The notes under the pieces were generated by a model, which was not told the origin of the DNA, searched no databases, and saw only the letters and a program-made list of their open reading frames with translations. DNA of 54,105 nt from Caecitellus pseudoparvulus. Lineage: Eukaryota; Protista; Bigyra: Bicosoecida. The translations under genes and the position numbers were made by a program. The stretch is taken from contig CBFFRQ010000022.1 in assembly GCA_965644315.1 (NCBI GenBank), positions 1 to 54,105 on the forward strand. Direction: 5' to 3'. Every line of letters starts with the position of its first letter. The first letter of the stretch is position 1. Shown piece by piece: positions 2,672 through 54,105 of the stretch.

Positions 2672-2904
2672 GTGCTTGCCAGCCAAGGTTGAGCGCAGGC
2701 TGGCCTAAGGGGGGGCGGGTCCACAGGGGAGGGAGGCACCCCCCCCTTACGATGAGGTGTCTGGAATCCCAGCACGAAAGGCTTGGAAGTAACATTCCGG
2801 ACACCTCTGAGATCCCTGGTGGTGCAGTGACACGCAGGTGTGGTGTGGAAAGTGGCCGCCTCCTGTGGAGCCCCAAGCGGTGCAGAAAAATGCAGCCTGT
2901 CCAC

Positions 2905-30953: not shown

Positions 30954-30958
30954 AACAA

Positions 30959-33336: not shown

Positions 33337-36255
33337 ATGGTGCGTGGGTGTAGGCATGGTGCCTCGCTTTCGCCAGCACTTGCGACAGAGCATGTCGCAC
33401 ACACACCACAGCACACAGCGCCCTGCCCGTCCCCCACGCCTCAGGCAGCAGCAACAGGACAAGTCATGGAGCGCAGTGCACCACCCACTACAGGCACCGA
33501 CGACACGCAGGCTGAGGTGGTGGCGGCATGCTTGCGCAAGGTGAAGTGCTTGCCGGGAGGAGTCATGGACCACGGTCCAGCACTGCGAGGACTGGCAGCC
33601 ATTGGGCGTGGCGAAGCGCCGGCTGCAGGCGACGCCCCATCGGCCATGAGCCTGGTGGAGCTGGAGGCTGCACTGCGTGACGCGGGGAGTGCGCTGTTGG
33701 AGCAGGCTGGGCTGTTGGCGGGGCAGCATGAGCGAGGTGGTGTATGTGCTGCGCTGCAGTACCTGTCATTTCGGTGCTTCTGCGCGGTGGATGTGCTGCA
33801 CCAAGCGGCGAGCGGTGTGAGTAACGATGCAGTGCCGGAGGGTGAGGCACTGTGGGGCGCCATTGTGGGTGCTTGGGGCAGTGTGCGGAGCGGTGTGAAT
33901 GTGGAGGGTGCGCTGGCTGACCTGACGCGATGGTGGCAAGGCTTCAAGGTGACGGGTGTGGATGTGGCTGGTCAGGGTGGCCCCGTCACACATGATGCTG
34001 GTGGCGAGGCAGCGATGGATGCGGCTCTGGCTGGCATGCGTCAGCAGGCTGGTTGGCTGCGAGGCGAGGCGGCAGGTGAGCTGAGGAGTGAGAGTGCTGC
34101 GGAGCACTTGGAGAGTGCAGCGAGCGCAGTGGAGGAGTTGCGTGGGCTGTTGGGGTGTGCGCCGGTGATGAGTGGTCGGAAGGTGAAGGTTGTGGGTGGG
34201 TTGGACTTGTCGGGCGGCTTGGAGTGCCTGAACGGCAAGGAAGTGAGTGTGTACAGTGGGCGGGTTGAGATCGTGGATGAGGATGTGGGTGGAGCTGGGG
34301 ATGTGGAGCAGTGGGCAGCGAGTGTGGAGGCGGGTGCAAGCGCACTTGCCACGAGTGTTGGCGCCGTGAAGCGTGGCGAAGCGGCTCGCATCGCCCATGG
34401 ACTGCCTCGGATGGCGCAGACTCCACGCAGAGCAGCACTAGCACACAGCAGTACAGCAGGCCGAGCTGATGAGCCACTCGGTCAGAGGAGCATGGTGACG
34501 GTGCAGGCGCAGTGTGAGGCGGGGTGGCCGTTGAGGGTGTTCCTGGAGGACGAAGGGTGGGGCGATGTTGGGCTGGATGTGAAGCAGCGCGTGGCTGTGA
34601 GGATGTTGGGTGTGTGTGCTGTGGCGGAGGCGTGTGGAGTGAGTCTGAGTGGTGTGGGTGTGGGGAGCTTTGTGGTGGTGGGTGTGGGGAGTGGCAGTGT
34701 TGGTGATCTGGTGGGGTCACTGGATGGGGGTGGGTGTGAGGTGGTGTTGAGTGCATGTGGCGGTGTGTGGGACACAGGTGGCTCTGATGGCGGCTGCCGT
34801 GGTGGTGAGGGTGATGGTGTGTTGAGTGTGCTGCGTGAGGTGCTTGATGTGGGAGGTGGTGCGTTGGGTTGCGGATCGGGCGCTGTGTCAAGCTTTGTGG
34901 GGAGCAGTGAAGGTGGTGAACATGCATTGACGAGCGCGTTGGAGGTGTTGGCGCGGGGAGGGAGTGGTTGCTGCATGGGTGCATATGCGATGGCGTGTGA
35001 GGGAAGTGGGGGTGGACTGGGTCACCTGGAAGGTGTGGAAAGTGAAGTGCGGGGTGTGCTTGATCGGGAGCAGGCAGGTGGTGCGGCAGGTCAGGCGGAG
35101 ACAGCTGACGCAGAGGCTGTACCGGCTACAGAGTCGAATATAGCTGCCGAGCAAGTGAAGTTCAGCGAGGAGAACACCACAGCGTTTGTGGAAGCGTGCA
35201 AGGAGGGTGAGCTTGCGAGAGTGCGCGAGTTGCTGTCATTGACGGGGGATGAGGCAGTGAATGTGCATGTGGAAGGAAATGTTGAGCTCCGGCCAGGGGT
35301 TTGCAGACAGGGCCCTGAGGCCGCTTTCCGAGTGGCATGCTACAATGGCCACACAGACATCGTGCGTGAGCTGCTGGGCCTCACTGGGGCGCGGGAGGTG
35401 GATGTACACGCGGCGGATGAGGATGGACCTGAGGCCGCCTTCCGATGGGCATGCCGCATGGGCCGCACAGATGTCGTGCGTGAGATGCTGGGCCTGACTG
35501 GGGCGCGGGAAGTGGATGTGCACGCGGCGGATGAGGGTGGACGTGAGGCTGGCTTCCGATGGGCATGCTACAATGGCCACACAGATGTCGTGCGTGAGCT
35601 GCTGGGCCTGACTGGGGCGTGGGAAGTGGATGTACACGCGGCGCCATGGGGTAGAGCTGAGGCCGCCTTCCGATATGCATGCCGCTATGGCCGCACAGAC
35701 ATCGTGCGTGAGCTGCTGGGCCTGACTGGGGCGCGGGCAGTGGATGTGCACGCGGCGGATGGGGATGGACCTGAGGCCGCCTTCCGATGGGCATGCCGCT
35801 GGGGCCACACAAACATCGTGCGTGAGCTGCTGGGCCTGACTGGGGCGCGGGAGGTGGATGTGCATGCGGCGGCTTGGGGTGGACCTGAGGCAGCCTTCCG
35901 AGGCGCATGCGAGAATGGCCACACAGACATCGTGCGTGAGCTGCTGGGCCTCACTGGGGCGCGGGAGGTGGATGTACACGCGGCGGATGAGGATGGACCT
36001 GAGGCCGCCTTCCGATGGGCATGCCGCATGGGCCGCACAGATGTCGTGCGTGAGCTGCTGGGCCTCACTGGGGCGCGGGAAGTGGATGTGCACGCGGCGG
36101 ATGGGGATGGACCTGAGGCCGCCTTCCGATGGGCATGCACCGAGGGCCACACAGACATCGTGCGTGAGCTGCTGGGCCTGACGGGGCACCGCAGGATCCC
36201 AGACAGCGTGCGACAGGAAGCCACCAAGTTTTCGAGCTTGAAGGAGTTGATTTGA
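33337..36255 (+). CDS. Helical domain + pseudokinase-like + ankyrin-repeat protein, copy 1 (8 repeats)
   Basis: 972-codon ORF with a probable in-frame intron right after the ATG (33340-33444, GTGCGT..CCTCAG). It has an ANK cap and eight 38-aa repeats GPEAAFRxACxxGHTDIVRELLGLTGAREVDVHAAxxx (the last truncated by the C-cap). Confidence 0.92.
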   Translation: MVRGCRHGASLSPALATEHVAHTPQHTAPCPSPTPQAAATGQVMERSAPPTTGTDDTQAEVVAACLRKVKCLPGGVMDHGPALRGLAAIGRGEAPAAGDAPSAMSLVELEAALRDAGSALLEQAGLLAGQHERGGVCAALQYLSFRCFCAVDVLHQAASGVSNDAVPEGEALWGAIVGAWGSVRSGVNVEGALADLTRWWQGFKVTGVDVAGQGGPVTHDAGGEAAMDAALAGMRQQAGWLRGEAAGELRSESAAEHLESAASAVEELRGLLGCAPVMSGRKVKVVGGLDLSGGLECLNGKEVSVYSGRVEIVDEDVGGAGDVEQWAASVEAGASALATSVGAVKRGEAARIAHGLPRMAQTPRRAALAHSSTAGRADEPLGQRSMVTVQAQCEAGWPLRVFLEDEGWGDVGLDVKQRVAVRMLGVCAVAEACGVSLSGVGVGSFVVVGVGSGSVGDLVGSLDGGGCEVVLSACGGVWDTGGSDGGCRGGEGDGVLSVLREVLDVGGGALGCGSGAVSSFVGSSEGGEHALTSALEVLARGGSGCCMGAYAMACEGSGGGLGHLEGVESEVRGVLDREQAGGAAGQAETADAEAVPATESNIAAEQVKFSEENTTAFVEACKEGELARVRELLSLTGDEAVNVHVEGNVELRPGVCRQGPEAAFRVACYNGHTDIVRELLGLTGAREVDVHAADEDGPEAAFRWACRMGRTDVVREMLGLTGAREVDVHAADEGGREAGFRWACYNGHTDVVRELLGLTGAWEVDVHAAPWGRAEAAFRYACRYGRTDIVRELLGLTGARAVDVHAADGDGPEAAFRWACRWGHTNIVRELLGLTGAREVDVHAAAWGGPEAAFRGACENGHTDIVRELLGLTGAREVDVHAADEDGPEAAFRWACRMGRTDVVRELLGLTGAREVDVHAADGDGPEAAFRWACTEGHTDIVRELLGLTGHRRIPDSVRQEATKFSSLKELI
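35311..36190 (+). repeat. 114-bp coding tandem repeat (ankyrin), 8 copies
   Basis: Period of 114 bp (ggccctgagg at 35311, ggacctgagg at 35425, and so on). Confidence 0.95.
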
Positions 36256-36397
36256 TCCCAAGCTTCAAACACAGACCAATGCACCATGTGACAAACCTGG
36301 CACGCACCTCAGACCAGCACACCTGCCCCACCTCCACCTCTGCCCATACCGCACCACATTCCACCGCACCACAATCCACCCCACACACCACACCGCA

Positions 36398-37420
36398 TCA
36401 CACCTCATCACCATTCCCACGCACCCCACCCCCCCCCTCACCTTCACTGCACTCCCCTCCGCACCGCACCAACGCCTCCCACACCCGCTTCCTGCCCTTC
36501 CCACCACCGCCTCGCAGCACCTTCAGCTTGTCCATGCGCATCGCCACGTGGCGCTTCTTCGCCTGCGCCTTCCGGCTCAGACACCCTGCAGCTGCTGCCG
36601 GCTTTACCACCGCCCCCTGCGCCACCTGCTTCGCCCGCCGCTCCTTCGCCGCCGCCCTGGCCCGCCACTCGCCGTTGTACACCGTCAGGAACACATCTGC
36701 ACCCATGGCAGCCTGCACACCCTCCATGACCTCCGACGCCAAGCCACCTGCCTCCGACGCAGCGGCCACCTGCTTTGCCTGCTCTGACCAGGATGGCGCG
36801 TCGGCCAGGCGGGGGTCGCTGGCCACGTGCTCTGCCGCCTGCACAGTGCGGAACACTGCCCGTGCCACCAGCACCACGTACCGCTGCAGGTCTGCCTGTG
36901 GCAAGTGCCCAGCCATGGCCCCGAACACGTTCAGCGCCGCTGTAGCTGGCGGCCCGCCCTTGTGCACTGCCGTGTTGCTGAGGCGCTGCAGCAGCCAGAA
37001 CAGCGGGTCCCGCGCACCGCCGCCGTCGTCGTCATGGGCGGTGTGTGTGGAGGGCGAGCTGTCACGCTGCACCGCCTTGCCGCCCACCACCTCCACGCCA
37101 CCCACGAGCAGGGTGAACTTGCCAGCCAAGCGAGTCGTGCGCTGGGCGAGGTAGGGCGGGATGGTGTTGCGGGAGCTGGGCGGCGTCGTGGCGTACAGCC
37201 CCACCGCCGTGAACAGCAACACCGGCGCCAGAGCCGTGCCCTGCTCCCTGCTCAGCGCCCCGTCCGCCAGCTGCACACAGGCTGCCCGGGCCAGGGCGAA
37301 CAGGCGCTCATACCCAGCCAGCCACGCCGCCACGCCAGGCGGTGGGGGGCAGCTCCCCACGCTCGCCACTGCCACGGTGTTCAGGACGGCGCCCAGCCAC
37401 CTGGCTGCCGGCTCCCGTAC
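36398..37420 (-). pseudogene. UTP20: UTP20 C-terminal fragment, copy 1
   Basis: LFWLLQRLS..ALNVFGAMA..LASEVME..GADVFLTVY..RAAAKERRAKQ..AVVKPAAAA..KAQAKKR parallels the UTP20 C-terminus (LLWLIQKLS..IFKFLGAVA..LSQEIIE..RALRKKRKA..VTNPDIAA). It is truncated at the array junction. Confidence 0.75.
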
Positions 37421-38462: not shown

Positions 38463-40919
38463 ATGGTGCGTGGGTGTAGCCATGGTGCCTCGCTTTCGCC
38501 AGCACTTGCGACAAAGCGTGTCGCACACACACCACAGCACACAGCGCCCTGCCCCTCCCCCACGCCTCAGGCAGCAGCAACAAGTCAAGCCACGGAGGGC
38601 AGTACAGCGCCCACTGCAGGCATCGACGACGCACAGGCTGAGGTGGTGGCGGCATGCTTGCGCAAGATGAAGTGCTTGCCGGGCAGCGTCATGGACCACG
38701 GCCCAGCACTGCGAGGACTGGCAGCCATTGGGCGTGGCGAAGCGCCGGCTGCAGGCGACGCCCCATCGGCCATGAGCCTGGTGGATCTGGAGGCTGCACT
38801 GCGTGATGCGGGGAGTGCGCTGTTGGAGCAGGCTGGGCTGTTGGCGGGGCAGCGTGAGCGAGGTGATGTGTGTGCTGCGCTGCAGTACCTGTCGTTCCGG
38901 TGCTTCTGCGCGGTGGATGTGCTTCATCAAGCGGCATCTGGTGTGAGTGCCGATGCGGTGCCGGAGGGCGACGCACTGTGGGGCGCCATTGTGGGTGCTT
39001 GGGGCAATGTACGGGCCGGTGTGAACGTGGAGGGTGCGCTGGCTGATCTGACACGATGGTGGCAAGGCTTCGAGGGGGGGGATGTGTATGTGGCTGGTGA
39101 GGGAGGCTCTTTCACACACGATGCCGGTGGCGAGGCAGCGGTGGAGGCGGCTCTGGCTGGCATGCGGCAGCAGGCTGGTTGGCTGCGAGGCGAGGCTGCA
39201 GGCGAATTGAGGAGTGAGAGTGCTGCGAAGCACTTGGAGTGTGCTGCAAGTGCAGTGGAGGAGCTGCGTGGGCTGTTGGGGTGTGGCCCAGTGATGAGTG
39301 GTCGGAAGGTGAAGGCTGTGCGCGGGTTGGACTTGTCGGGCGGCTTGGAGTGTCTGAATGGCAAGGATGTGAGTGTGTACAGTGGACGGGTTGAGATCGT
39401 GGATGAGGATGTTGGAGGAGCTGGGGATGTGGAGCAGTGGGCAGCGAGTGTGGAGGCGGGTGCGAGGGCGCTTGCCACGAGTGTTGGCGCCGTGAAGCGT
39501 GGCGAAGCGGCTCGCATCGCGCATGGCCTGCCGCGGATGGCGCAGACTCCACGCAGAGCAGCACTAGCACACAGCAGTACAGCAGGCAGGGCTGATGAGC
39601 CACTCGGTCAGAGGAGCATGGTGACGGTGCAGGTGCAGTGTGAGGCGGGGTGGCCGCTGAGGGTGTTCCTGGAGGATGAAGCGTGGGGCGATGTTGGGCT
39701 GGAGGTGAAGCAGCGCGTGGCTGTGAGGGTGCTGGGTGTGTGTGCTGTGGCGGAGGCATGTGGGGTGGATGTGAGTGGCGTGTGTGTGGGGAGCTTCGTG
39801 GTGGTGGGTGTGGAGAGTGGGAGTGTGGGTGATCTGGTGGGCGCACTGGATGGGGGTGGGTGTGAGGTGGTGTTGAGTGCATGTGGCAGTGTGTGGGGCA
39901 CAGGTCGCCTTGATGGTGTCAGAGGTGATGGTGGTGGTGTGTTGGGTGTGCTGCGTGAGGTGCTTGGCGTGGGAGGTGGTGCGTTGGGTGGCGGACCGGG
40001 CGTTGGATCAAGCTTCGTTGACAGCGGTGAAGGTGGTGAGCATGCACTGACAAGCGCGTTGGAGGTGTTGGGGCGGGGAGGGAGTGGTTGCTGCATGGGT
40101 GCATATGCGATGGCGTGTGAAGGAAGTGGAGGTGGAGTGGGTCATCTGGAAGGTGTGGAAAGTGCTGTGCGGAGTGTGCTTGATGGTGAGCAGGCAGCTG
40201 GTGCGGCGGGTCAGGCGCATACAGCTGACGCTGAGGCTGTACCGGCTACAGAGTCGGAGATTGCTGCCGAGCAAGTGAAGTTCAGCGAGGAGAACACCAC
40301 AGCGTTTGTGGAAGCGTGCAAGGATGGGGAACTTGCGAGAGTGCGCGAGTTGCTTGCATTGACGGGGGATGAGGCAGTGAATGTACATGCGGAAGGAAGT
40401 GTTGAGGTCTTGCCTGGGTTTCACAAACAGGGCCCTGAGGCCGCTTTCCGAGCGGCATGCCGCAATGGCCACACAGACATCGTGCGTGAGCTGCTGGGCC
40501 TCACTGGGGCGCGGGAGGTGGATGTGCATGCGGCGGATGGGGGTGGGCCTGAGGCCGCCTTCCGAGGCGCATGCCGCTATGGCCGCACAGACATCGTGCG
40601 TGAGCTGTTGGACCTGACTGGGGCACGGGCAGTGAATGTGCACGCGGCGGATGGGGCTGGACCTGAGGCCGCCTTCCGACTGGCATGCCGCTGGGGCTAC
40701 ACAGACATCTTGCGTGAGCTGCTGGCCCTCACTGGGGCGCGGGCAGTGGATGTGCACGCAGCGGATAAGCATGGCCCCGAGGCTGCCTTCCGATGGGCAT
40801 GCCGTGAAGGCTACACAGACATCGTGTGTGAGCTGCTGGGGCTGACTGGGCATCGCAGGATCCCAGACAGCGTGCGACAGGAAGCCACCAAGTTTTCGAG
40901 CTTGAAGGAGTTGATTTGA
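38463..40919 (+). CDS. Helical domain + pseudokinase-like + ankyrin-repeat protein, copy 2 (4 repeats)
   Basis: Paralog of 33337..36255; 114-bp repeats start at 40431. Confidence 0.92.
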   Translation: MVRGCSHGASLSPALATKRVAHTPQHTAPCPSPTPQAAATSQATEGSTAPTAGIDDAQAEVVAACLRKMKCLPGSVMDHGPALRGLAAIGRGEAPAAGDAPSAMSLVDLEAALRDAGSALLEQAGLLAGQRERGDVCAALQYLSFRCFCAVDVLHQAASGVSADAVPEGDALWGAIVGAWGNVRAGVNVEGALADLTRWWQGFEGGDVYVAGEGGSFTHDAGGEAAVEAALAGMRQQAGWLRGEAAGELRSESAAKHLECAASAVEELRGLLGCGPVMSGRKVKAVRGLDLSGGLECLNGKDVSVYSGRVEIVDEDVGGAGDVEQWAASVEAGARALATSVGAVKRGEAARIAHGLPRMAQTPRRAALAHSSTAGRADEPLGQRSMVTVQVQCEAGWPLRVFLEDEAWGDVGLEVKQRVAVRVLGVCAVAEACGVDVSGVCVGSFVVVGVESGSVGDLVGALDGGGCEVVLSACGSVWGTGRLDGVRGDGGGVLGVLREVLGVGGGALGGGPGVGSSFVDSGEGGEHALTSALEVLGRGGSGCCMGAYAMACEGSGGGVGHLEGVESAVRSVLDGEQAAGAAGQAHTADAEAVPATESEIAAEQVKFSEENTTAFVEACKDGELARVRELLALTGDEAVNVHAEGSVEVLPGFHKQGPEAAFRAACRNGHTDIVRELLGLTGAREVDVHAADGGGPEAAFRGACRYGRTDIVRELLDLTGARAVNVHAADGAGPEAAFRLACRWGYTDILRELLALTGARAVDVHAADKHGPEAAFRWACREGYTDIVCELLGLTGHRRIPDSVRQEATKFSSLKELI

Positions 40920-41092
40920 TCTCAAGCTTCAAGCACAGACCAATGCACCATTTCCCATTACCTGACGCATGCCTCAGACCAGCACACCTGCCCCACCTCC
41001 ACCTCTGCCCATACCGCACCACAATCCACCGCACACACCACACCGCATCACACCTCATCACCATCCCCACGCACCCCAACCCCCCCTCACCT

Positions 41093-43101: not shown

Positions 43102-45786
43102 ATGGTGCGTGGGTGTAGCCATGGTGCCTCGCTTTCGCCAGCACTTGCGACAAAGCGTGTCGCACACACACCACAGCACACAGCCCCCTGCCCCTCCCCG
43201 ACGCCTCAGGCAGCAGCAACAAGTCAAGCCATGGAGGGCGCTGCATCAGCCACTGCAGGCATCGATGACACACAGGCTGAGGTGGTGGCGGCATGCTTGG
43301 GCAAGTTGAAGTGCTTGCCGGGCAGCGTCATGGACCACGGACCAGCACTGCGAGGACTGGCAGCCATTGGGCGTGGCGAAGCGCCTGCTGCAGGCGACGC
43401 CCCATCGGCCATGAGCCTGGTGGAGCTGGAAGCTGCACTGCGTGATGCGGGGAGTGCGCTGTTGGAGCAGGCTGGGCTGTTGGCAGGGCAGCATGAGCGA
43501 GGTGGTGTGTGTGCTGCGCTGCAGTACCTGTCGTTCCGGTGCTTCTGCGCGGTGGATGTGCTGCATCAGGCGGTGTCTGGCGTGAGTGTCGATGCGGTGC
43601 CGGAGGGCGACGCACTGTGGGGCGCCATTGTGGGTGCTTGGGGCAGTGTGCGGAGCGGTGTGAACGTGGAGGGTGCGCTGGCTGATCTGACGCGATGGTG
43701 GCAAGGCTTCGAAGTGGCAGATGTGGATGTGGCTGGTGAGGGTGGCCCACTCACACATGATGCTGGTGGCGAGGCGGCGACGGATGCGGCTCTGGCTGGC
43801 ATGCGTCAGCAGGCTGAGTGGCTGCGAGGCGAGGCGGCAGGCGAGTTGAGGAGTGAGAGTGCTGCGAAGCACTTGGAGTGTGCTGCAAGTGCAGTGGAGG
43901 AGCTGCGTGGGTTGTTGGGGTGTGCGCCTGCGATGAGTGGTCGGAAGGTGAAGGCTGTGCGTGGCTTGGACTTGCCAGGCGACTTGGAGTGCCTGAACGG
44001 CAAGGGTGTGAGTGTGTACAGTGGGCGGGTTGAGATCGTGGATGAGGATGTGGGTGGATCTGGTGATGTGGAACAGTGGGCAGCAAGTGTGGAGGCGGGT
44101 GCGACAGCCCTTGCCACGAGTGTTGGCGCTGTGAAGCGTGGCGAAGCGGCTCGCATCGCGCATGGACTGCCGCGGATGGCGCAGACACCACGCAGAGCAG
44201 CACTCGCACACAATACTTCAGCTGGCCGAGCTGATGAGCCACTCGGCCAGAGGAGCATGGTGACGGTGCAGGTGCAGTGTGAGGCGGGGTGGCCGCTGAG
44301 GGTGTTCCTGGAGGACGAAGCGTGGGGCGATGTCGGGCTGGAGGTGAAGCAGCGCGTGGCTGTGAGGGTGCTGGGTGTGTGTGCTGTGGCGGAGGCGTGT
44401 GGAGTGGAGGTGGGTGATGTGGGTGTGGGGAGCTTTGTGGTGGTTGGTGTGGGGAGTGGCAGTGTGGGTGATCTGGTGGGGTCACTGGAGGGGGGTGGGA
44501 TTGAGGTGGTGTTGAGTGCATGTGGCGGTGTGTGGGGCACAGGTGGCTCTGATGGGGGCAGCGGTGATGTGAAGGGTGTGTTGAGTGTGCTGCGTGAGGT
44601 GCTTGGTGTGGGAGGTGGTGCGTTGGGTGGCGGACCGGGCGTTAGGTCAAGCTTCGTAGGCAGCAGTGAAGGTGGTGAGCATGCACTGTCAGGCGCGTTG
44701 GAGGTGTTGGGGAGGGCAGGGAGCGGTTGCTGCATGGGTGCATATGCGATGGCGTGTGAAGGAAGTGGAGGTGGAGTGGGTCACCTGGAAGGTGTGGAAA
44801 GTGCTGTGCGGAGTGTGCTTGATGGTGAGCAGGCGGCTGCTGCGGCAGGGCAGGCGGAGACAGCTCAAGCTGAGGCTGTACCGGCTACAGAGTCGGAGGT
44901 TGCTGCGGAGCAAGTGAAGTTCAGCGAGGAGAACACCACAGCGTTTGTGGAAGCGTGCAAGGATGGGGAGCTTGCGAGAGTGCGCGAGTTGCTGGCATTG
45001 ACGGGGGATGAGGCAGTGGATGTGCATGCGGAAGGATGTGTTGAGGTCTGGCCTTGGTTTCACAAACAGGGCCCTGAGGCTGCCTTCCGATGGGCATGCG
45101 GCAATGGCCACACAGACGTCGTGCGTGAGCTGCTGGGCCTGACTGGGGCGCGGGAGGTGGATGTGCACGCGGCGGATGGGGGTGGACCTGAGGCTGGCTT
45201 CCGGGGCGCATACCTCATGGGCCACACTGACATCGTGCGTGAGCTGCTGGGCCTCACCGGGGTGCGGGAGGTGGATGTGCATGCGGCGGATGGGGGTGGA
45301 CCTGAGGCTGGCTTCCGACAGGCATGCTCCGAAGGCCACACAGACATCGTGCGTGAGCTGTTGGGCCTGACTGGGGCGCGGGAGGTGGATGTGCACGCGG
45401 CTGCTCGGGGTGGGCCTGAGGCTGGCTTCCGAGCAGCATGCTTCAATGGCCACACAGACATCGTGCGTGAGCTGCTGGGCCTGACCGGGGCGCGGGAGGT
45501 GGATGTGCACGCAGCGGATCGGGATGGACCTGAGGCTGGCTTCCGATGGGCATGCGGCAATGGCCACACAGACATCGTGCGTGAGCTGCTGGGCCTGACC
45601 GGGGCGCGGGAGGTGGATGTGCATGCGGCGGATGGGGATGGACCTGAGGCCGCCTTCCGACGGGCATGCGAGAATGGCCACACAGACATTGTGCGTGAGC
45701 TGCTGGGCCTGACGGGGCACCGCCGGATCCCAGACAGCGTGCGACAGGAAGCCACCAAGTTTGAGAGCTTGAAGGAGTTGATTTAA
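43102..45786 (+). CDS. Helical domain + pseudokinase-like + ankyrin-repeat protein, copy 3 (6 repeats)
   Basis: Paralog of copies 1 and 2; 114-bp repeats start at 45070. Confidence 0.92.
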   Translation: MVRGCSHGASLSPALATKRVAHTPQHTAPCPSPTPQAAATSQAMEGAASATAGIDDTQAEVVAACLGKLKCLPGSVMDHGPALRGLAAIGRGEAPAAGDAPSAMSLVELEAALRDAGSALLEQAGLLAGQHERGGVCAALQYLSFRCFCAVDVLHQAVSGVSVDAVPEGDALWGAIVGAWGSVRSGVNVEGALADLTRWWQGFEVADVDVAGEGGPLTHDAGGEAATDAALAGMRQQAEWLRGEAAGELRSESAAKHLECAASAVEELRGLLGCAPAMSGRKVKAVRGLDLPGDLECLNGKGVSVYSGRVEIVDEDVGGSGDVEQWAASVEAGATALATSVGAVKRGEAARIAHGLPRMAQTPRRAALAHNTSAGRADEPLGQRSMVTVQVQCEAGWPLRVFLEDEAWGDVGLEVKQRVAVRVLGVCAVAEACGVEVGDVGVGSFVVVGVGSGSVGDLVGSLEGGGIEVVLSACGGVWGTGGSDGGSGDVKGVLSVLREVLGVGGGALGGGPGVRSSFVGSSEGGEHALSGALEVLGRAGSGCCMGAYAMACEGSGGGVGHLEGVESAVRSVLDGEQAAAAAGQAETAQAEAVPATESEVAAEQVKFSEENTTAFVEACKDGELARVRELLALTGDEAVDVHAEGCVEVWPWFHKQGPEAAFRWACGNGHTDVVRELLGLTGAREVDVHAADGGGPEAGFRGAYLMGHTDIVRELLGLTGVREVDVHAADGGGPEAGFRQACSEGHTDIVRELLGLTGAREVDVHAAARGGPEAGFRAACFNGHTDIVRELLGLTGAREVDVHAADRDGPEAGFRWACGNGHTDIVRELLGLTGAREVDVHAADGDGPEAAFRRACENGHTDIVRELLGLTGHRRIPDSVRQEATKFESLKELI

Positions 45787-45971
45787 TCCCAAGCTTGAAG
45801 CACAGACCAATGCACCATTCGACAAACCTGACACGCACCTCAGACCAGCACACCTGCCCCACCTCCACCTCTGCCCATACCGCACTACATTCCACCGCAC
45901 ACACCACACCGCACACACCACACCGCATCACACCTCATCACCATTCCCACGCACCCCACGCCCCCTCACCT

Positions 45972-46946
45972 TCACTGCACTCCCCTCCGCACCGCACCAA
46001 CGCCTCCCACACCCGCTTCCTGCACTTCGCACCACCGCCTCCGCAGCACCTTCAGTTTGCCCATGCGTTTCGCCACGTGGTGCTTCTTCGCCTGCACCTT
46101 CCGACTTCGACACCCTGCAGCTGCTGCCGGGTTCACCACCGCCTCCTGCGCCACCTGCTTCGCCCGCCGCTCCTTCGCCGCTGCCCTGGCCCGCCGCTCG
46201 CCGTTGTACGCCGTCAGGAACACATCTGCACCCATGGCACCCTGCACACCCTCCATGACCTCCCACGCCAAGGCACCTGCCTCCGACGCAGCGGCCGCCT
46301 GCTGTGCCTGCTCTGACCAAGATGGCGCATCGGCCAGGCGGGGGTCGCTGGCCACGTGCTCTGCCGCCTGCACAGTGCGCAACACTGCCCGTGCCACCGG
46401 CACCACGAAGCGCTGCAGGTCTGCCTGCGGCACCTGCCCAGCCATGGCCCCGAACACGTTCAGCACCGTGGTGGCCCCTGGCCCGCCCTTGTGCACTGCC
46501 GTGTTGCTGAGGCGCTGCAGCAGCCAGAACAGCGGGTCCCGCGCACCACCACCGTCGTCGTGGGCGGTGTGTGTGGAGGGCGAGCTGTCACGCTGCACCG
46601 CCTTGCCGCCCACCACCTCCATGCCACCCACGAGCAGGGTGCACTTGCCGATCAAGTAAGCAGTGCGCTGGGCGAGGTGGGGCGGGATGGTGTTGCGGGG
46701 GGTTGGCGGCGTCGTGGCGTAAAGCCCCACCGCCGTGAACAGCAGCACTGCCGCCAAAGCCGTGCCATGCTCCCTGCTCAGTGCCCCGTCCGCCAGCTGC
46801 ACACAGGCTGCCCGGGCCAGGGCGAACAGGCGCTCATCCCCAGCCAGCCACGCCGCCACGCCAGGTGGTGGGGGGCAGCTCCCCACGCTCGCCACTGCCA
46901 CGGTGTTCAGGGCGGCGCCCAGCCACCTGGCTGCCGGCTCCCGTAC
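45972..46946 (-). pseudogene. UTP20: UTP20 C-terminal fragment, copy 3
   Basis: Paralog of copies 1 and 2. Confidence 0.75.
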
Positions 46947-47232
46947 CTGCCACTCTCGCCGTCGCGGTTGAACACGACGATGCTGTCTCCAGCCGCCCCT
47001 GCCACGCGCTTACCCTGCGAAAGTCGCCGAGGAAGGTGTAAAAGTGGTTGCCCCGAGGTTGCCGGCACCCCAGCCGGCAACCATGTTTCCCGGCAGGAGG
47101 GGCGGCGGGCAGTCCCACGCTAGTGGCACAATTGTCCCCCGCCGCCCCAACGCAGAGTAGACGACGGCAGGACCGGGCATGACAAAACCAGTCATTAGCC
47201 GGCCTCGTCACTCTCTTTCCTTTTTTTTCGAG

Positions 47233-49317
47233 ATGGCATCGGATGATCCAGCTTCCAGCGACACGGAGGGCGGAAGCTGGGAGGACATCCACGACAAAAT
47301 GATGTCTGTCAACTCCGCCAAGCAAGCCAAGGCGCTCATAACGGAGCAGGAGTTCGAGTACTGGCTGAAGTGGGCGGATTCTGAGGATTTTGGTAAGATG
47401 GAGGCCGCTTGGCGCCTCCGGGAGGTGCCCGAGGGATTCCGGGCAGATCGCATGCGATCCCTCATTGCGGGCAGAGCTTTCCGCCTCCCCGCTGACGGTG
47501 CCCCTCATCGCGCAGGCGGCTCACCACGGGGGCACGGCACGAAGCGAACCCGTCCGCGCGGTGCGAGCAGTGGCACGCCCTACGGCCCGCACCTACCCCC
47601 GCGCCCGACCCAGCCGGACGCAGTCGCAGGCGACCTCCCGCAAGATCCCGCCACAGTGCTTACGTGGTTCCTGCAGAGGGGAGCGACGGTGCCGAGCGAG
47701 GACGTCGCCGTGCAGCTGCAGTTCTACGTGGGCTTGGCAACGGAGGAGACATCGCCGTACGCCCTCTCCGCTTGGCCTCCACGGCGCTTCGCCGCATGGT
47801 GCAGACTCAACGGTATTCCCCCCGACCTCACCCCCGACGACATCGTGATGCATTTGCAGCGGGTCCTGGAGGCCGCGCTGGCGGGCGACGACGACTTTGG
47901 CGACGACGATGCCGGCGCCCCGTTCTTTCCCGTTTTCCCGGGCACCACACCGGATGCCGCCCGGTTACAGCCCCGTGCGGCGGCCCCGGGTCACCCCCCG
48001 GCCTCCAAGAGGCACAGGGCGGCCTATAGCCCGCAGCCCCCCCCTCCCCCGTGGGGCGGCGGAGCCTCGCCGGCAGTCCACCCCGAAGGCGGGTCGGCTG
48101 TTTTCGGTCACATGGGGGAGAACAGCGGTCGGTCGTCGCCAGCCGACGAGGTACTGGTCACTGTAGGCGCGCTGCGGGTCATTGGGCCGACCGCACACCC
48201 CTCGTCGGCGGTGGCCCGGGACCGCCTGTCAGCCTTGGGGGCAGTTTTCGCTGCGGGGACCACAGACGCCTTGACCACGGTGGCTGTCGAGATGGCTGAG
48301 GCTGCTGCACGAGAGGTGCCCGCAGCAACGGGCCCAGTGCCGTCAGGTACGTTCCTGTCCCGCCAGCTCCCCCCCCACTCGCCCCGCGTGCCCGCTCCCG
48401 GCGACCCGTCCTGGCTCACAGCCCCCGGCGATGAGGTAGCCCCGCCGTCCGCGTCGGTCATGATGGACGACGCTATGGACGTAGTGACTGCTGTACGCCT
48501 GGTGCAAGGGAGGGTGGAAGTTACAGTTGACCCAACCCATCTAGTGGCAGTAACTGGGGCGGGTGCCCTGTCGGCATGCCACATGCTGGGCAACCGTGGG
48601 GGCGCTTGGTGGCTTGCTGCGATGACCAGGGACTTGCTGACGGCGCCTTCCGACGACCTCCACCGCTCCCTCCGAGCGTTCTGGTGGAAGTGGGCGTCCG
48701 AGGTGCCCGCCCTGGCAGACCAGCGGGGCCTGTGCCGAGCCATGGCGTGCGCACTCCTGATCACAATCGCAGTGCGGGCCGTGGCGCAGACCGCCGCTGC
48801 GTTGCCCGAAGGCCAGCGCAGGCGATGGGCCCAGCTGACGTGGGCCTCCTGGGTGGCCACGTTCCGCACTAACGCCACCATTGTCATGATGGCGTCGGCG
48901 ACGGGGCAAGCACTGGTGGCCAGCTCGCTGGCGCGCGAGGCATGGGCGGCCGGGGCCGCCGCCACACCGATGCCAGGTGCGGGGGGCGGCCCGGCGCAAA
49001 CCCCCGCTCGTGGCCCTCCCGCGGGGCTGTACCGGCAGGACGACCCGAGCACATTCGTGTGGTGCCCCGGGTGCGTCGGATCCGACCGGCGGCGCCGGTC
49101 GCTGGCATCCTGCCCACGCCTGGCCCAGCATGTGGCCCACCTGCGCCGGACCCACACAGTCGGAGGTAAGCCCGCAGAACTTACCCAGGCGCAGGCAGTG
49201 GCCATGCTGGTGCGCCAGTGGGAGCGGAAGGTGGCATCCAAGGGACGTGACTTCCAGCGGCGCATGCAGCCCCGCGCTGTCACCACGGCCATGGTGGAGG
49301 CAGCTCTCAGCCTCTAG
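47233..49317 (+). CDS. Ngaro ORF1 (Gag-like)
   Basis: ATG immediately after repeat A1. Pro/Ala-rich, with a C-terminal WCPGC..CPRLAQHVAHLRRTH zinc-finger-like motif. The assignment rests on its position in the element. Confidence 0.8.
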   Translation: MASDDPASSDTEGGSWEDIHDKMMSVNSAKQAKALITEQEFEYWLKWADSEDFGKMEAAWRLREVPEGFRADRMRSLIAGRAFRLPADGAPHRAGGSPRGHGTKRTRPRGASSGTPYGPHLPPRPTQPDAVAGDLPQDPATVLTWFLQRGATVPSEDVAVQLQFYVGLATEETSPYALSAWPPRRFAAWCRLNGIPPDLTPDDIVMHLQRVLEAALAGDDDFGDDDAGAPFFPVFPGTTPDAARLQPRAAAPGHPPASKRHRAAYSPQPPPPPWGGGASPAVHPEGGSAVFGHMGENSGRSSPADEVLVTVGALRVIGPTAHPSSAVARDRLSALGAVFAAGTTDALTTVAVEMAEAAAREVPAATGPVPSGTFLSRQLPPHSPRVPAPGDPSWLTAPGDEVAPPSASVMMDDAMDVVTAVRLVQGRVEVTVDPTHLVAVTGAGALSACHMLGNRGGAWWLAAMTRDLLTAPSDDLHRSLRAFWWKWASEVPALADQRGLCRAMACALLITIAVRAVAQTAAALPEGQRRRWAQLTWASWVATFRTNATIVMMASATGQALVASSLAREAWAAGAAATPMPGAGGGPAQTPARGPPAGLYRQDDPSTFVWCPGCVGSDRRRRSLASCPRLAQHVAHLRRTHTVGGKPAELTQAQAVAMLVRQWERKVASKGRDFQRRMQPRAVTTAMVEAALSL

Positions 49318-51537
49318 GAGGTGGGCCGGAGCGCGGTGGTGAGAGCGACCACGGGGTACCGGGCCGTGCCCGTGGAGTGGAGGGCTGCCGCCCCGCTCTC
49401 GACAGACCACCGCGCCATGGCCGTGCTCATCGAATCAATGGTCCAGCAGCTGCATGGGGACCGTTGTTGGACTCCACCGGGGCTCTTCGAGGACATCTTG
49501 CGTGGGGGCTTGGACTGGGGCCCCCACCCCGTGGTCTCATACTGGGGTTGCCAGGAGGCCCACGCTGACGTGTGTCCCGCATGCGGCGAGACCACTTCCA
49601 GATTACGGCAGCTTGAGCGGTGCGCAGCCATGCGACTGCTCACCGTGGTCACGCTGCGCGGGTGGGACCCCGCTTGGCTGCTGTTCCGCCGCCCCCCGGC
49701 AGCGGCATCCCCGTCCTCGGCATACGTGCTGCAGCCGCACGACGAGCGGGCGGTGGCAGCGGCCTATGACGCCTTCGCGGCTGCGCGCGTGCTGCAGCCG
49801 GTCACCCCCCAGCAGCTGCAGCAGCACCGAAAGATGGGGGGGCCAGCCGCTTCTGCCTTCGTTGTCACGACATGGGCCCCCCAGCCGGGCGTCAGCGACG
49901 AAGCTCTGCGACAGTGGGCTGCTGCGAACCCAGGCGAGGCGGTGCAGGCCGCCAGCTCTTCCCGCGCGCCCGCCCGCCCGAGCCGCCTGTTCCGGGCCAA
50001 GCAGCGGGTGGTGTACGATCTGGCAGCCGTCAACCAGGCCTCAGTGAGCCCCCCATTCCACTACCCCACGCTGGAGAGCTGGGCGCTGCGCCTCCCGCCG
50101 AACTCGGACTGTGTTGTCCTGGACGTGGAAGCAGGGTACACGGCCATCCCCATCGCTCCGTCGGGCGCCGGACTGTTCACCATGCTCGCCCAGGGCAGGC
50201 CAGCCTTCCGCATGCTTCGGATGGCCTTCGGGTACAGCCCGGCCGGGGCCATTTTCTGCTTTTTTTCTGGACTTCTGGGCGCCAAGATCGAAGCGGCGTT
50301 CCCAGCAGGGCATGTGGTTGTGTACGTAGACGACGTCGGGCTTGGGGGAGCTACGTTGGGGCCACGGCCATCGATCGTGCCCAAGATAACTCAACTGTTC
50401 GAGGACGTGGGCTTCCGGGTGTCGCGCAAGAAGACGCAAGGGCCACAGCGCGTCGTTCAGTACTTGGGGATGGTGGTCAGGTGTGCCCCGTGTGGGGTGT
50501 ACCTTGAGTGTCCTCAAGCCAAACGAACTCAGCTGCGGTGGCAGCTGGCCGCGGTCCTTAATCGCCTCGGCGCTTGCTCCACCATCCCCAAGCGCGTTTT
50601 CGCCGCGGTCACAGGGCGCTTGCACGGCCTGTCGGCCGTGGTGCCCCACGCAAAACAAACGCTGTCGCTCTTGTACGACACCATGCGCACACACAAGTAC
50701 CGCGTCGGCCCCCCCGGCGCTCTCGTGCCTGTCCCCCCGGCGTCGCACGGGGCCCTGCGGACCCTCCTTGAGGCCCTCGGTGGGCCGTTATCGACGGGCC
50801 CGATGCGCCCGCTCTCCCCACTGTCAAGCAGGTGGCGCGCCGCCCTCTTTGGCTCGTGCGACGCGTCGGGGGAAGGCGGGCTGGGGGCAACAGTGTCGAG
50901 GTGGGCAGGGCCAGGAGAACGCACAGACTCCGCTTGGTACGCGTCCATGCGCATCCCCGGCACAGCCCCGGGCGAGGAGCTCGTGGGAGCCTCCACGATG
51001 CTGGAGCTGTACGCAATCGCCTTGGCTATGGCAATGGCGCGGCATGTTTTTCCCGAGCCGGGGCCGCTGCTGCTATGCCTAGCTGCGGACAGCCAGGCAG
51101 CGGTGGCGCTGGCGCGACGAGGGTACAGCAAGCACAGCCGTGAACTCACGCGCGTCTGCGGGGTCCTCGAGCGGGTTTCCCGCGTTTTGGACGTCCACTT
51201 GGCGCCTCGGTGGATCCCGAGGAGCCTGAATTGGCGGGCGGACGCCCTCAGCCACCCCGAAAGGGTGGATAGCAGCACACCGGCAGCGCTCGGCCTCCCG
51301 CCAGGGCAACCAGCCGAGCTGGAGGTATCAGCAGGGGGAAGCAGCGCCGCTGAGCGGTGGCATGATGTGTCCCTAGACGTAGGGCCGTCGGGAAAGGCCG
51401 GGGCGGGCACCGCGTGGATTCACTCAGCTCAACTCTCCGTCGCCCTGCACAGACACACTCTGGATAAGGAAGCAGACCTTCTGGCAGATGATCAGGGCCA
51501 TCCCCGCGTCCCCGATCAGCAGGATTCACCAACATAG
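49318..51537 (+). CDS. Ngaro ORF2: reverse transcriptase + RNase H
   Basis: RT motifs KQRVVYDLAAVN, VLDVEAGYTAIPI, RMAFGYSPAGAIF, VYVDD and KKTQGPQRVVQYLGM. RNase H motifs SCDASG, LELYAI, ADSQAAV and WIPRSLNWRADALS. Confidence 0.95.
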   Translation, partial: EVGRSAVVRATTGYRAVPVEWRAAAPLSTDHRAMAVLIESMVQQLHGDRCWTPPGLFEDILRGGLDWGPHPVVSYWGCQEAHADVCPACGETTSRLRQLERCAAMRLLTVVTLRGWDPAWLLFRRPPAAASPSSAYVLQPHDERAVAAAYDAFAAARVLQPVTPQQLQQHRKMGGPAASAFVVTTWAPQPGVSDEALRQWAAANPGEAVQAASSSRAPARPSRLFRAKQRVVYDLAAVNQASVSPPFHYPTLESWALRLPPNSDCVVLDVEAGYTAIPIAPSGAGLFTMLAQGRPAFRMLRMAFGYSPAGAIFCFFSGLLGAKIEAAFPAGHVVVYVDDVGLGGATLGPRPSIVPKITQLFEDVGFRVSRKKTQGPQRVVQYLGMVVRCAPCGVYLECPQAKRTQLRWQLAAVLNRLGACSTIPKRVFAAVTGRLHGLSAVVPHAKQTLSLLYDTMRTHKYRVGPPGALVPVPPASHGALRTLLEALGGPLSTGPMRPLSPLSSRWRAALFGSCDASGEGGLGATVSRWAGPGERTDSAWYASMRIPGTAPGEELVGASTMLELYAIALAMAMARHVFPEPGPLLLCLAADSQAAVALARRGYSKHSRELTRVCGVLERVSRVLDVHLAPRWIPRSLNWRADALSHPERVDSSTPAALGLPPGQPAELEVSAGGSSAAERWHDVSLDVGPSGKAGAGTAWIHSAQLSVALHRHTLDKEADLLADDQGHPRVPDQQDSPT

Positions 51538-52357
51538 GCTGGCAAAGGGGACGGTGGTCAAGTACGTTCGCGCGGTTGCTGGCCTGATCAGGGCCGCTCC
51601 AGCACCCCGGGACAGGGCGCGGACCATGGTGGGCATCTTAACGGGCGGCGTGGCCGCAGGCAGATGGGCCCCCCATCGGGCGAAGCAGATCCTGGCGCAA
51701 TGGGTCGGTGGTTTTAGGTATCTGGGCCTGCCAATCCCGTCGCTAGCCCCGCTGGGGCTCACAGTCGGCAGCATCTGCCGGGCAATCCGCCGGCTCCACC
51801 GAGGGAGAGGGGAGCAACACCGCCGCCCTATCAGCAAAGAACAAGTCATGGAGGCCATGAAGCGGGCATGGGACGGGCCACACCTCGGGAGGCATGCCCC
51901 AACTGCCGCCGCAGCTATCTACATCGGCTTTCATGGCATGTGCAGGCCGGGAGAGCTCCGGGGCCTGCGATGGGAGGAGTTGCACTTCGGGCGGGCGGGC
52001 CCCCTGCAGTGGGTGGAGGCCAGGGTCACGGATAAAACGCACCTGAGTGCAAACCGCCACATCCAGGTGGTGCGCCAGGCCGAGTGGGCGGGGGCCTTCG
52101 ACCGCCTCCGGGAGCAGGCCCGGGACAAGCGGGGAAGCCTGCTCCCAAGGTGGGCGTGGCTCAGCCTGCAAGGCATCCTGAAGGCTGTAGCGGGCGTGTC
52201 CTTGGCCCACCTGAGACCCGGGGGCAATATGTTCTGGACAGGCCGGGCCCCCGACGTCTTGGTGGAGCACGCGGCGGGCTGGGCGGCTGGCTCCCCCACC
52301 CGGGCACGATACTACACCCAGGGGGGGAGGGGGCGAGGCTGTGGCACGAGGCCATGA
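51488..52357 (+). CDS. Ngaro ORF3: tyrosine recombinase
   Basis: IGFHGMCRPGEL (Arg), DKT (Lys), AHLRPGG (HxxR-like box), AGW and RARYY (Tyr). It overlaps the end of ORF2. Confidence 0.9.
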   Translation: MIRAIPASPISRIHQHRLAKGTVVKYVRAVAGLIRAAPAPRDRARTMVGILTGGVAAGRWAPHRAKQILAQWVGGFRYLGLPIPSLAPLGLTVGSICRAIRRLHRGRGEQHRRPISKEQVMEAMKRAWDGPHLGRHAPTAAAAIYIGFHGMCRPGELRGLRWEELHFGRAGPLQWVEARVTDKTHLSANRHIQVVRQAEWAGAFDRLREQARDKRGSLLPRWAWLSLQGILKAVAGVSLAHLRPGGNMFWTGRAPDVLVEHAAGWAAGSPTRARYYTQGGRGRGCGTRP

Positions 52358-53852
52358 CACCCAGGGGAGGAAGCAAGCATTGAAAAGTATTGGCGGGTGC
52401 CGCAAGGAGGCGTCCCCTCCCCCAAGAGATGCAGCGAGCCCTGGTGGCCGCTGGCATAGAGGGGGGAGGGGACGGCCTCGAGGCGGGCCCAGTTCAATGC
52501 ATTTCGATTGCCACGCACAACGCACCAACACGAGGGAACCGAGGTTGCCGGCACCCCAGCCGGCAACCATGTTCCCGGCAGGAGGGGCGGCGGGCAGTCC
52601 CACGCTAGTGGCACAATTGTCCCCCGCCGCCCCAACGCAGAGTAGACGACGGCAGGACCGGGCGACAAAACCGTCATTGCCGGCCTCGTCACTCTCTTCC
52701 TTTTTCTTTTTCTCGATTGGCGGGCGCAGGGCAACAGGCGCTCATCCCCAGCCAGCCACCGTCACCCGCTGTCCTCCTCCTTTCCCATTGCAGGTGCCCA
52801 GGAGGCGCCCCCCCAGGATGCCGGCCCCGTGGCCGCTGGCATAGAGGGGGGAGGGGACGGCCTCGAGGCGGGCCCAGTTCAATGCATTTCGATTGCCACG
52901 CACAACGCACCAACACGAGGGAAACGTCGGCTGCGCCGGCACGCACGTCCTCCGACACTGCCACGTGCGTGATGAAGGTGCTGCCCGAGAGGAAGGCAGT
53001 GCCTTTCGCCAGCTCCACTTTGTTGGCGCCGGTGTTCTCCACGTGCACCATGGTCTGTGGAGCACAGCAGCGGCGGTTGCGGAATTTGCACGCCACTCGC
53101 AGTGGTCGAATGCCCGCCTGCGCACCAGGGCATTCTGAATTCCAGTCTTGGAGCTGCCACCGCCTGAAACAGCCAGAGTTCCACCTGCAAGGGGCACCAG
53201 TTGGAAGACAGGTGCCCCCATGGAGGCGTTGGACAGCGCCATGGCTTTGTTGTGGCTTGGGGCAGAGCAGTCGCCACCACGCCAATGAATATCGTGTGGG
53301 CAAGGAAGTGTGACGGAGCCACACTGCCAGACACGTCAAGGCCGCAACCCTTACACACAAAAGTGCGGGCACAGCAGAGCGGGCGGTTTTGCCCCGCCCA
53401 GTGCCGTGTATGGACAGCGTTGCTCGGAGCGCACGAGTCGACCCCCTCTATCGCACTCCGCGCCTTGGCGCAGCTCCCGTCAGCACTCGAACGGGGATCT
53501 TGCGGATGTCCAGATAGCTAGTTCCGCACCTCTCTTGCTGAGATGATGGGCACCGCATCGAGCGGAGCGGGACACCCTTCCCATGTCTTGCACCAAATTG
53601 CTCCTCATCCATTTCCCACTCTTACTTGTGGTGTCATTGGGCATCCGGACATCAGCGTGCATTGTGCCTTGTCTCCACTTCTGGCCGCCACAGGTGAGCG
53701 TGCACTGGTGCAAGTGCGGAAGTTGCTCCCTCACAAGTCAAGCACGACAGCGCCTTCCCACGGCACCAACACACATGTCCACTGCCATCACCCCGCAGGA
53801 GTCGGCTTTACAGCACTGCCATACCTGGCAAGATCCCCTACCGTCCATCGCC

Positions 53853-54105
53853 ATGGTGCGTGGGCGTGGGCATGGTGCCTCGCTTTCGCCAGCACTTGCG
53901 ACAAAGCGTGTCGCGCACACGCCACAGCACACAGCGCCCTGCCCCTCCCCGACGCCTCAGGCAGCAGCAACAGGACAAGCCATGGAGGGCAGTGCAGTGC
54001 CCACTGCAGGCATCGACGACGCACAGGCTGAGGTTGTGGCGGCATGCTTGCGCAAGGTGAAGTGCTTGCCGGGCAGCGTCATGGACCACGGCCCAGCACT
54101 GCGAG
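53853..54105 (+). CDS. Ankyrin/pseudokinase gene copy 4, 5' end only
   Basis: ATG GTG CGT ... AEVVAACLRKVKCLPGSVMDHGPALR in the same frame as copies 1-3; cut by the window end. Confidence 0.85.
   Translation, partial: MVRGRGHGASLSPALATKRVAHTPQHTAPCPSPTPQAAATGQAMEGSAVPTAGIDDAQAEVVAACLRKVKCLPGSVMDHGPALR

What the first reader, a model, noticed from the sequence alone, without database searches (positions are those of the whole stretch)
33337..54105. Tandem array of ankyrin-repeat genes hypervariable at ligand-contact positions: a natural DARPin-like receptor library
Seen in sequence: three complete paralogs have 8, 4 and 6 near-identical 114-bp repeats. The scaffold (EAAFR.AC..GHTDIVRELLGLTGAREVDVHAA) is almost invariant, but three sites change radically. 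The residue after FR is V/W/Y/G/A/L/Q/R; the two after AC are YN/RM/RY/RW/EN/TE/RN/RE/GN/LM/SE/FN; the loop triplet is DED/DEG/PWG/DGD/AWG/DGG/DGA/DKH/ARG/DRD. The loop after the N-cap also differs (NVELRPGVCRQ / SVEVLPGFHKQ / CVEVWPWFHKQ). Established: the helix-1 end and beta-turn form the ankyrin binding face and are the positions randomised in designed ankyrin proteins. High internal repeat conservation with a few hypervariable codons typifies fungal NLR sensor domains such as HET-E. Inference: this is a rapidly diversifying non-self recognition system (e.g. against viruses or symbionts) in a protist, with no NACHT or NB-ARC domain.
Basis: partly seen in the sequence, partly recalled or inferred. 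Interest (0 to 1): 0.92.

Follow-up and report, generated by a model that had tools for sequence, protein, structure and literature searches.

The report
Pseudokinase receptors with hypervariable ankyrin sensors
A marine single-celled eukaryote carries a tandem array of genes that join an unknown helical domain and a catalytically dead kinase to ankyrin repeats whose binding face is being diversified by natural selection, which makes them strong but untested candidates for a protist immune receptor that works without the usual nucleotide-binding switch.

Summary
Observation confirmed: three genes with 8, 4 and 6 38-aa ankyrin repeats, plus a fourth cut by the contig end. Over 251 repeats from this genome a codon mixture model finds positive selection at five sites (8, 11, 12, 37, 38; 2dlnL 258 to 1457; scaffold omega 0.25) and in the N-cap loop. 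All five lie on the ankyrin binding face. The finding itself left out the N-terminal 600 aa: AlphaFold (pLDDT 84) gives a helical domain with no PDB match, then a protein-kinase fold (Z 13.6) lacking the catalytic Lys, Asp and Asp. About 77 near-complete copies (alleles included) occur in the genome, none outside this stramenopile lineage; older relatives carry Sel1 repeats instead. The probable second haplotype (flank 96-97% identical) has 11, 6 and 13 repeats at the same positions, with different contact residues. Best reading (0.55): an intracellular non-self receptor in which a pseudokinase replaces the NOD switch. It is not an NLR, and MLKL homology of the helical domain was not found. 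Ligand, expression and output are unshown. This scan reported the same family before on other contigs (s1-652547, s1-641844); I found no paper describing it.

The parts
33337..36255 (+). Gene 1 (972 aa): leader, helical domain, pseudokinase, linker, N-cap with inserted loop, 8 ankyrin repeats (35311-36186), C-cap
38463..40919 (+). Gene 2 (818 aa), same layout, 4 repeats (40431-40850)
43102..45786 (+). Gene 3 (894 aa), same layout, 6 repeats (45070-45718); used for modelling
43264..43926 (+). Gene 3 helical domain (aa 55-275): bundle of about six helices plus two long helices leading into the kinase fold; no specific PDB match; omega about 0.43
43909..44781 (+). Gene 3 pseudokinase domain (about aa 270-560): kinase fold, no beta3 Lys, no conserved catalytic Asp, no DFG Asp
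45037..45069 (+). Gene 3 inserted loop after the N-cap (aa 646-656), positively selected (omega 4-9 at 646, 649, 650, 652-654)
45070..45718 (+). Gene 3 ankyrin array; positively selected repeat positions 8, 11, 12, 37, 38
53853..54105 (+). Start of a fourth copy, in frame up to the contig end
36300..37400 (-). 3' piece of UTP20 carried downstream of each copy (also 40965-42047, 45832-46926); the full-length UTP20 lies next to a family member on C43
37407..38141 (-). Copy of the 5' part of the WD40 gene at 27744-28480 (also 42054-42789, and split 46933-47055 / 52924-53540); with the UTP20 piece it forms the spacer of the tandem unit
47053..52926 (+). Ngaro-type tyrosine-recombinase retrotransposon inserted in the third spacer: A1-[ORFs]-B1 A2 B2 repeats, RT ORF 49321-51537, recombinase-like ORF 51488-52357
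28481..33010 (+). PIF/Harbinger-like DNA transposon with terminal inverted repeats and DDE_Tnp_4 transposase, upstream of gene 1; absent at the matching site on C79

Best explanation
These are cytoplasmic, germline-encoded non-self receptors. The ankyrin array, with five variable residues per repeat plus a variable N-cap loop, forms the binding surface, and new specificities arise by point substitution under positive selection, repeat gain and loss by unequal crossover, and exchange of repeats between genes (shown). The catalytically dead kinase domain takes the place that a NACHT/NB-ARC switch has in NLRs: ligand binding to the ankyrins would release or re-pair the pseudokinase and expose the N-terminal helical domain, which would oligomerise or recruit a partner to start defence such as cell death (inferred by analogy with MLKL and fungal effector-repeat fusions). 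The likely selecting agents are intracellular parasites such as giant viruses or bacteria (inferred).
For: Positive selection at five sites on both trees and, for the first repeat, on an independent tree from the N-terminal region; third codon positions stay ancestral while first and second vary, so selection rather than targeted mutagenesis; sites map to ankyrin positions 2, 3, 10, 13, 14, i.e. beta-turn and helix 1; 233 different five-residue combinations in 257 repeats and linkage decaying within a repeat, p=0.001; kinase fold without catalytic residues; about 77 near-complete copies, all but two without a stop in the domain; sensor swapped to Sel1 repeats in older relatives; probable alleles differ in repeat number and contact residues; no signal peptide or clear membrane helix; same evolutionary pattern as fungal NLR ANK domains (PMC4986451).
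Against: No ligand, phenotype or confirmed transcript. The helical domain matches no MLKL, HeLo or RPW8 structure (best Z 6.8 on a helical hairpin, 5.4 on generic bundles), so the output step has no direct support. Motif mapping in the kinase rests on secondary structure and alignment, not on model coordinates. Recombination inflates tree-based omega. The purifying signal in the N-terminal region (omega 0.40-0.45) is only a little below that of the UTP20 passenger piece (0.54).
Confidence: 0.55

Rival explanations
1. Direct restriction factors or substrate adaptors: the ankyrins bind and block, or deliver for degradation, a parasite protein, and the helical-pseudokinase part is a passive scaffold rather than a signalling switch.
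For: Same selection signature expected. The genome also has ankyrin-only genes with the same repeats and no pseudokinase, and a chimera with the other class's C-cap. No known executor fold found.
Against: A 500-aa two-domain module kept intact in about 77 copies and re-used with Sel1 repeats looks like a dedicated output module.
Confidence: 0.2
2. Allorecognition or internal genetic conflict: the variable surfaces recognise polymorphic proteins of the same species or of selfish elements (mating or fusion barriers, drive, transposon products).
For: Probable alleles are far more divergent (about 9% in the N-terminal region) than their flanks (3-4%); fungal het genes of this type act in allorecognition (PMC12881547); Ngaro elements crowd the arrays.
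Against: Dozens of loci with hundreds of different surfaces fit many foreign targets better than one self locus; no linked partner gene was found.
Confidence: 0.12
3. Offensive effectors used on prey or host cells.
For: Ankyrin proteins are common in symbiont and parasite effector sets (PMC4986451 discussion); the organism is a probable heterotrophic stramenopile.
Against: No signal peptide or membrane anchor; 800-1900 aa proteins.
Confidence: 0.07
4. No selection for diversity: a freely duplicating segment with mutational hot spots or gene conversion, partly pseudogenised.
For: The unit spreads with a UTP20 fragment that also shows omega below 1; several copies are broken by Ngaro; no RNA proof.
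Against: Synonymous diversity at the five codons is ordinary (pS 0.32 vs 0.30) while nonsynonymous is 0.55 vs 0.08; passenger shows only a weak omega>1 class (2dlnL 10) against 258+ for the repeats; passenger is broken in 5 of 15 copies over 0.9 kb, whereas 42 of 47 young copies keep the 1.5-kb domain in one frame.
Confidence: 0.06

Closest known systems
Fungal NLRs with highly conserved ANK/TPR/WD repeats (HET-E/HNWD family; Podospora Pa_3_8560), PMC4986451
   Same: High internal repeat conservation, repeat-number polymorphism, five positively selected positions on the concave ANK face, interchangeable repeat types, intracellular.
   Different: No NACHT or NB-ARC domain; a pseudokinase sits in the middle; repeats are 38 aa; a single-celled stramenopile rather than a filamentous fungus.
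MLKL and MLKL-like proteins (animal, plant; fungal HeLo-like-kinase fusions), PMC13519141, PMC12881547
   Same: Helical bundle, two long connecting helices, then a pseudokinase; rat MLKL pseudokinase is among the tied top structural matches (Z 13.5).
   Different: Helical domain shows no match to the MLKL four-helix bundle or HeLo; the kinase match is not specific to MLKL; MLKL has no C-terminal variable sensor.
Fungal NOD-less effector-repeat fusions (S8 or CHAT protease fused to WD40, TPR or ANK), PMC12881547
   Same: Output domain fused directly to a repeat sensor without a NOD.
   Different: Output here is a helical domain plus pseudokinase, not a protease.
Brown algal ROCO and NB-TPR candidate receptors, PMC11378527
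   Same: Stramenopile gene family with shuffled repeats under diversifying selection at the concave face.
   Different: Those use LRR/TPR exons and a GTPase or NB-ARC switch; the genes here are single ORFs with ankyrins and a pseudokinase.
Designed ankyrin libraries (DARPin, ANK-N5C), PMC4308713
   Same: Fixed scaffold and caps; variable positions 2, 3, 10, 13, 14 coincide with randomised ones.
   Different: Natural; 38-aa repeat; position 5 equivalent is fixed (Pro); an extra variable loop after the N-cap.

Membership tests
NLR/STAND receptor | Central NACHT or NB-ARC domain | tested here: not met
   No Pfam hit in the three genes; the central region folds as a kinase; genome NACHT hits are elsewhere
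NLR/STAND receptor (fungal HiC type) | Repeats with high internal conservation (about 85%) | tested here: met
   88-91% to the gene consensus, 80-85% pairwise
NLR/STAND receptor (fungal HiC type) | Positive selection on the binding face | tested here: met
NLR/STAND receptor (fungal HiC type) | Repeat-number polymorphism between alleles | tested here: met
   8/4/6 against 11/6/13 repeats on C79, collinear at 96-97% over window 3000-28480; allelism is inferred from collinearity
NLR/STAND receptor | Ligand-triggered oligomerisation and defence output | not testable with these tools
   needs experiment
Pseudokinase | Protein-kinase fold | tested here: met
   Z 13.6, rmsd 4.0, 235 aligned; all top 50 matches are kinases; Foldseek, atlas and viral searches agree
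Pseudokinase | Missing VAIK Lys, HRD Asp or DFG Asp (PMC13519141) | tested here: met
   No Lys in beta3, Asp at the catalytic position in 1 of 16 rows, Ala (Ser in two rows) for the DFG Asp; mapping inferred from strands and alignment
MLKL family | N-terminal four-helix bundle homologous to MLKL/HeLo/RPW8 | tested here: not met
   No such entry among the top 50 of three structure searches, no Pfam or atlas hit; weak matches do not exclude remote homology
MLKL family | Brace helices between bundle and pseudokinase | tested here: inconclusive
   Two long helices (model 167-188, 198-218) sit in that place
MLKL family | Phosphorylation-triggered membrane permeabilisation | not testable with these tools
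   needs experiment
Ankyrin repeat protein | Ankyrin profile match | tested here: met
   Ank_2 E 4e-29 to 1e-12; PDB ankyrin matches
Diversity-generating retroelement target | Adenine-specific variation copied from a template repeat | tested here: not met
   All four bases vary at the variable codons, whose commonest states (TGG, CGC, GCC, GGG) are adenine-free; the nearby RT belongs to Ngaro
Ngaro retrotransposon (insert) | Split direct repeats A1-[ORFs]-B1A2B2, RT, tyrosine recombinase (PMC8547959) | tested here: met
   the recombinase ORF had no Pfam hit and is assigned by position and motifs

The most novel reading that the evidence does not exclude
A class of single-chain immune receptor in a unicellular eukaryote in which a pseudokinase replaces the nucleotide-binding switch, with interchangeable hypervariable sensors (ankyrin or Sel1) and a new helical executor domain, giving a heterotrophic flagellate a recombining repertoire of hundreds of binding surfaces against giant viruses or bacteria.
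Probability: 0.4. Interest if true: 0.9.

Novelty: new variant of a known kind. Interest (0 to 1): 0.72.

Why it matters
How single-celled eukaryotes detect viruses and other parasites is largely unknown (stated in the abstract of PMC10945749). This family gives concrete, testable candidates: the contact residues are pinpointed, alleles differ, and the modules can be expressed separately. If the pseudokinase is the switch, NLR-like logic has been reinvented without a NOD domain. It is also a natural 38-aa ankyrin scaffold that converged on the positions engineers randomise, with an extra variable loop.

Tried and rejected
Sequence searches of the N-terminal region (Pfam single and alignment, PDB sequence profile, atlas features for the helical part) gave nothing; only structure revealed the kinase. 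MLKL/HeLo identity of the helical domain was searched three ways and not found. Viral origin of the module: only generic weak kinase matches. Targeted mutagenesis (DGR-like) rejected. My first guess that the organism is Cafeteria burkhardae was dropped: a window permease is only 51% identical to its Cafeteria match; a Symbiomonas guess could not be tested. The UTP20 piece was tried as a neutral control but has omega about 0.54, so it is an imperfect one. Expression: no run on record as RNA holds the gene well; weak contig matches in runs guessed to be RNA prove nothing. Paper searches found no description of this family.

Full report
Observation. Three + strand ORFs (33337-36255, 972 aa; 38463-40919, 818 aa; 43102-45786, 894 aa) end in 8, 4 and 6 repeats of exactly 114 bp that match ankyrin profiles. 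A fourth copy begins at 53853 and is cut by the contig end. Within a gene the scaffold is 88-94% identical between repeats and the five variable positions 26-30%.

Organism. A 30.6-Mb, GC-rich eukaryote. The best named relatives of a window permease are Cafeteria (51%) and oomycetes, and near-identical DNA is in marine metagenomes. I read this as a marine heterotrophic stramenopile that is not Cafeteria; the species is not determined.

Selection on the repeats. From the window and 50 fetched loci I extracted 257 full 38-aa repeats of 44 genes. Five positions (8, 11, 12, 37, 38) have entropy 2.7-3.2 bits, with up to 19 amino acids. Without a tree, pN at these codons is 0.55 against a scaffold pS of 0.30 and pN of 0.08; among repeats differing by at most 2 scaffold bases the ratio is 8.6; the 15 window repeats alone give 2.9. 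Synonymous diversity at the five codons is ordinary and their third bases stay mostly ancestral, so this is amino-acid-level selection and not a mutational hot spot or DGR-like process. IQ-TREE gives omega 2.7-6.1 for these codons and 0.25-0.26 for the scaffold. A site-mixture model of my own over all 38 codons, which avoids picking sites afterwards, prefers an omega>1 class (2dlnL 258 and 1457 on two trees) and assigns the same five sites on both; position 23 appears on one tree only. Using only the first repeat on a tree built from the N-terminal region gives the same sites (2dlnL 87), and the inserted loop after the N-cap carries the highest omega values of that region. Recombination inflates such estimates, so the tree-free result is the safer one.

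Position on the fold. Alignment to the solved ANK-N5C protein places the sites at ankyrin positions 2, 3 (beta-turn), 10, 13 and 14 (helix 1). PMC4308713 randomises 2, 3, 5, 10, 13 and 33 and shows them forming one binding surface; position 14 is randomised in classic DARPins (my knowledge). I could not read model coordinates, so this mapping is by alignment.

Diversification. There are 233 different five-residue combinations in 257 repeats. Near-identical repeats occur mostly within genes, some between genes, and linkage decays with distance inside the repeat (p=0.001). Blocks of repeats are duplicated within genes. A second class of ankyrin-only genes uses the same repeats with another C-cap, and one gene joins the N-terminal module to that other cap. 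C79 is collinear with window 3000-28480 at 96-97%, most likely the other haplotype. Its first three genes have 11, 6 and 13 repeats with different contact residues, and their N-terminal regions differ from the window's positional counterparts by 9-13%.

The N-terminal 600 residues. No sequence library matches them. AlphaFold on a 16-sequence alignment gives pLDDT 83.7, pTM 0.85. Model residues about 216-505 (gene 3 aa 270-560) match protein kinases: best Z 13.6, with ALK, a rice receptor-like kinase, MLKL, IRAK4 and RIPK2 tied; Foldseek, atlas and viral searches point the same way, more weakly. The beta3 strand has no Lys, the catalytic-loop Asp is present in 1 of 16 rows, and the DFG Asp is replaced, so it is a pseudokinase by the definition in PMC13519141. 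The helical part, modelled alone (pLDDT 86), gives only generic bundle and hairpin matches (Z at most 6.8) and no MLKL, HeLo or RPW8 entry. The layout resembles MLKL, but homology of the bundle is not shown. There is no signal peptide.

Family. The module has 84 profile matches in the genome, about 77 near-complete (alleles included), with identities down to 36%. An exhaustive search of 1.8 billion representatives finds only 20 proteins, none named; those traced come from marine metagenome assemblies. Two carry Sel1 repeats after the module and one has the module at the C-terminus of a 1608-aa protein. Omega is 0.40-0.45 in both domains. Of 47 young copies 42 keep the domain in one frame; the others are cut by Ngaro insertions or a contig end.

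Origin of the array. Each unit is gene + 3' piece of UTP20 + 5' piece of the neighbouring WD40 gene. The intact UTP20 lies tail to tail with a family member on C43, and about 35 copies genome-wide carry the UTP20 piece, so the young clade probably spread from that locus by segmental duplication. The piece is broken in 5 of 15 copies but still has omega 0.54; I cannot explain this, and it weakens low omega alone as proof of function. A Harbinger-like element (28481-33010) and a Ngaro element (47053-52926) are later insertions.

Mechanism. Shown: a variable binding face under positive selection, repeat turnover, a conserved helical plus pseudokinase module, exchangeable sensors. Inferred: ligand binding flips the pseudokinase and frees the helical domain as output (0.55). 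Rivals: direct restriction or adaptor function (0.2), allorecognition or internal conflict (0.12), offensive effector (0.07), no selection (0.06). Transcription is not shown: no holder is on record as RNA, and contig matches in guessed RNA runs are weak.

Comparison and verdict. It evolves like fungal NLR ANK domains (PMC4986451) and brown algal ROCO repeats (PMC11378527) but fails NLR membership for lack of a NOD; NOD-less repeat fusions and HeLo-like-kinase proteins are known in fungi (PMC12881547). I found no paper on a helical-pseudokinase-hypervariable ankyrin family. The scan's own notes had already proposed the pseudokinase on other contigs; I tested it independently here and it held. 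Verdict: real, a new variant of repeat-based non-self sensors, interest 0.72.

Noticed in passing
window 47053-52926; also C21, C71, C72, C79, C142: About 10 of 23 near-identical Ngaro copies lie in these gene arrays, which cover under 1% of the genome; several interrupt family genes. Targeting or tolerance is unresolved.
   Followed up: partly
window 36300-37400 and about 35 copies: The UTP20 3' piece travelling with each gene has omega about 0.54, lowest nearest the ankyrin gene; possible gene conversion from the intact UTP20 or a function of its own.
   Followed up: partly
window 49315-49321: Ngaro ORF1 and the RT ORF are in frame across a single TAG, a candidate for readthrough.
   Followed up: no
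window 28481-33010: Harbinger-like transposon with about 20-bp inverted repeats, present here and absent at the matching site on C79.
   Followed up: partly
L007, L014, L016, L018, L019: Ankyrin-only genes with the same 38-aa repeats, a short N-terminus and a different basic C-cap; up to about 25 repeats.
   Followed up: partly
P0017 (1608 aa); P0007, P0023: Relatives with the module at the C-terminus behind 1100 unannotated residues, or followed by Sel1 repeats.
   Followed up: no
L043, L045 repeat arrays: The long variable loop also occurs inside some arrays as 47-49-aa repeats.
   Followed up: no
window 33337-33470 (leader): Several copies have stops in the first 30 codons, so the true start may be a later Met; gene 2 lacks Met44.
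   Followed up: partly
window 34000-35000, 39000-40000, 44000-45000: GC skew near 0.5 over the Gly/Val-rich pseudokinase C-lobe.
   Followed up: no
window 1-2830: Two dispersed repeat families (1-525 and 526-2820) with many copies at 70-85% identity genome-wide.
   Followed up: no
P0034: A protein in the 90% cluster of the window's 5'-nucleotidase is filed under Symbiodinium sp. KB8, which suggests this organism is a contaminant of that assembly.
   Followed up: no
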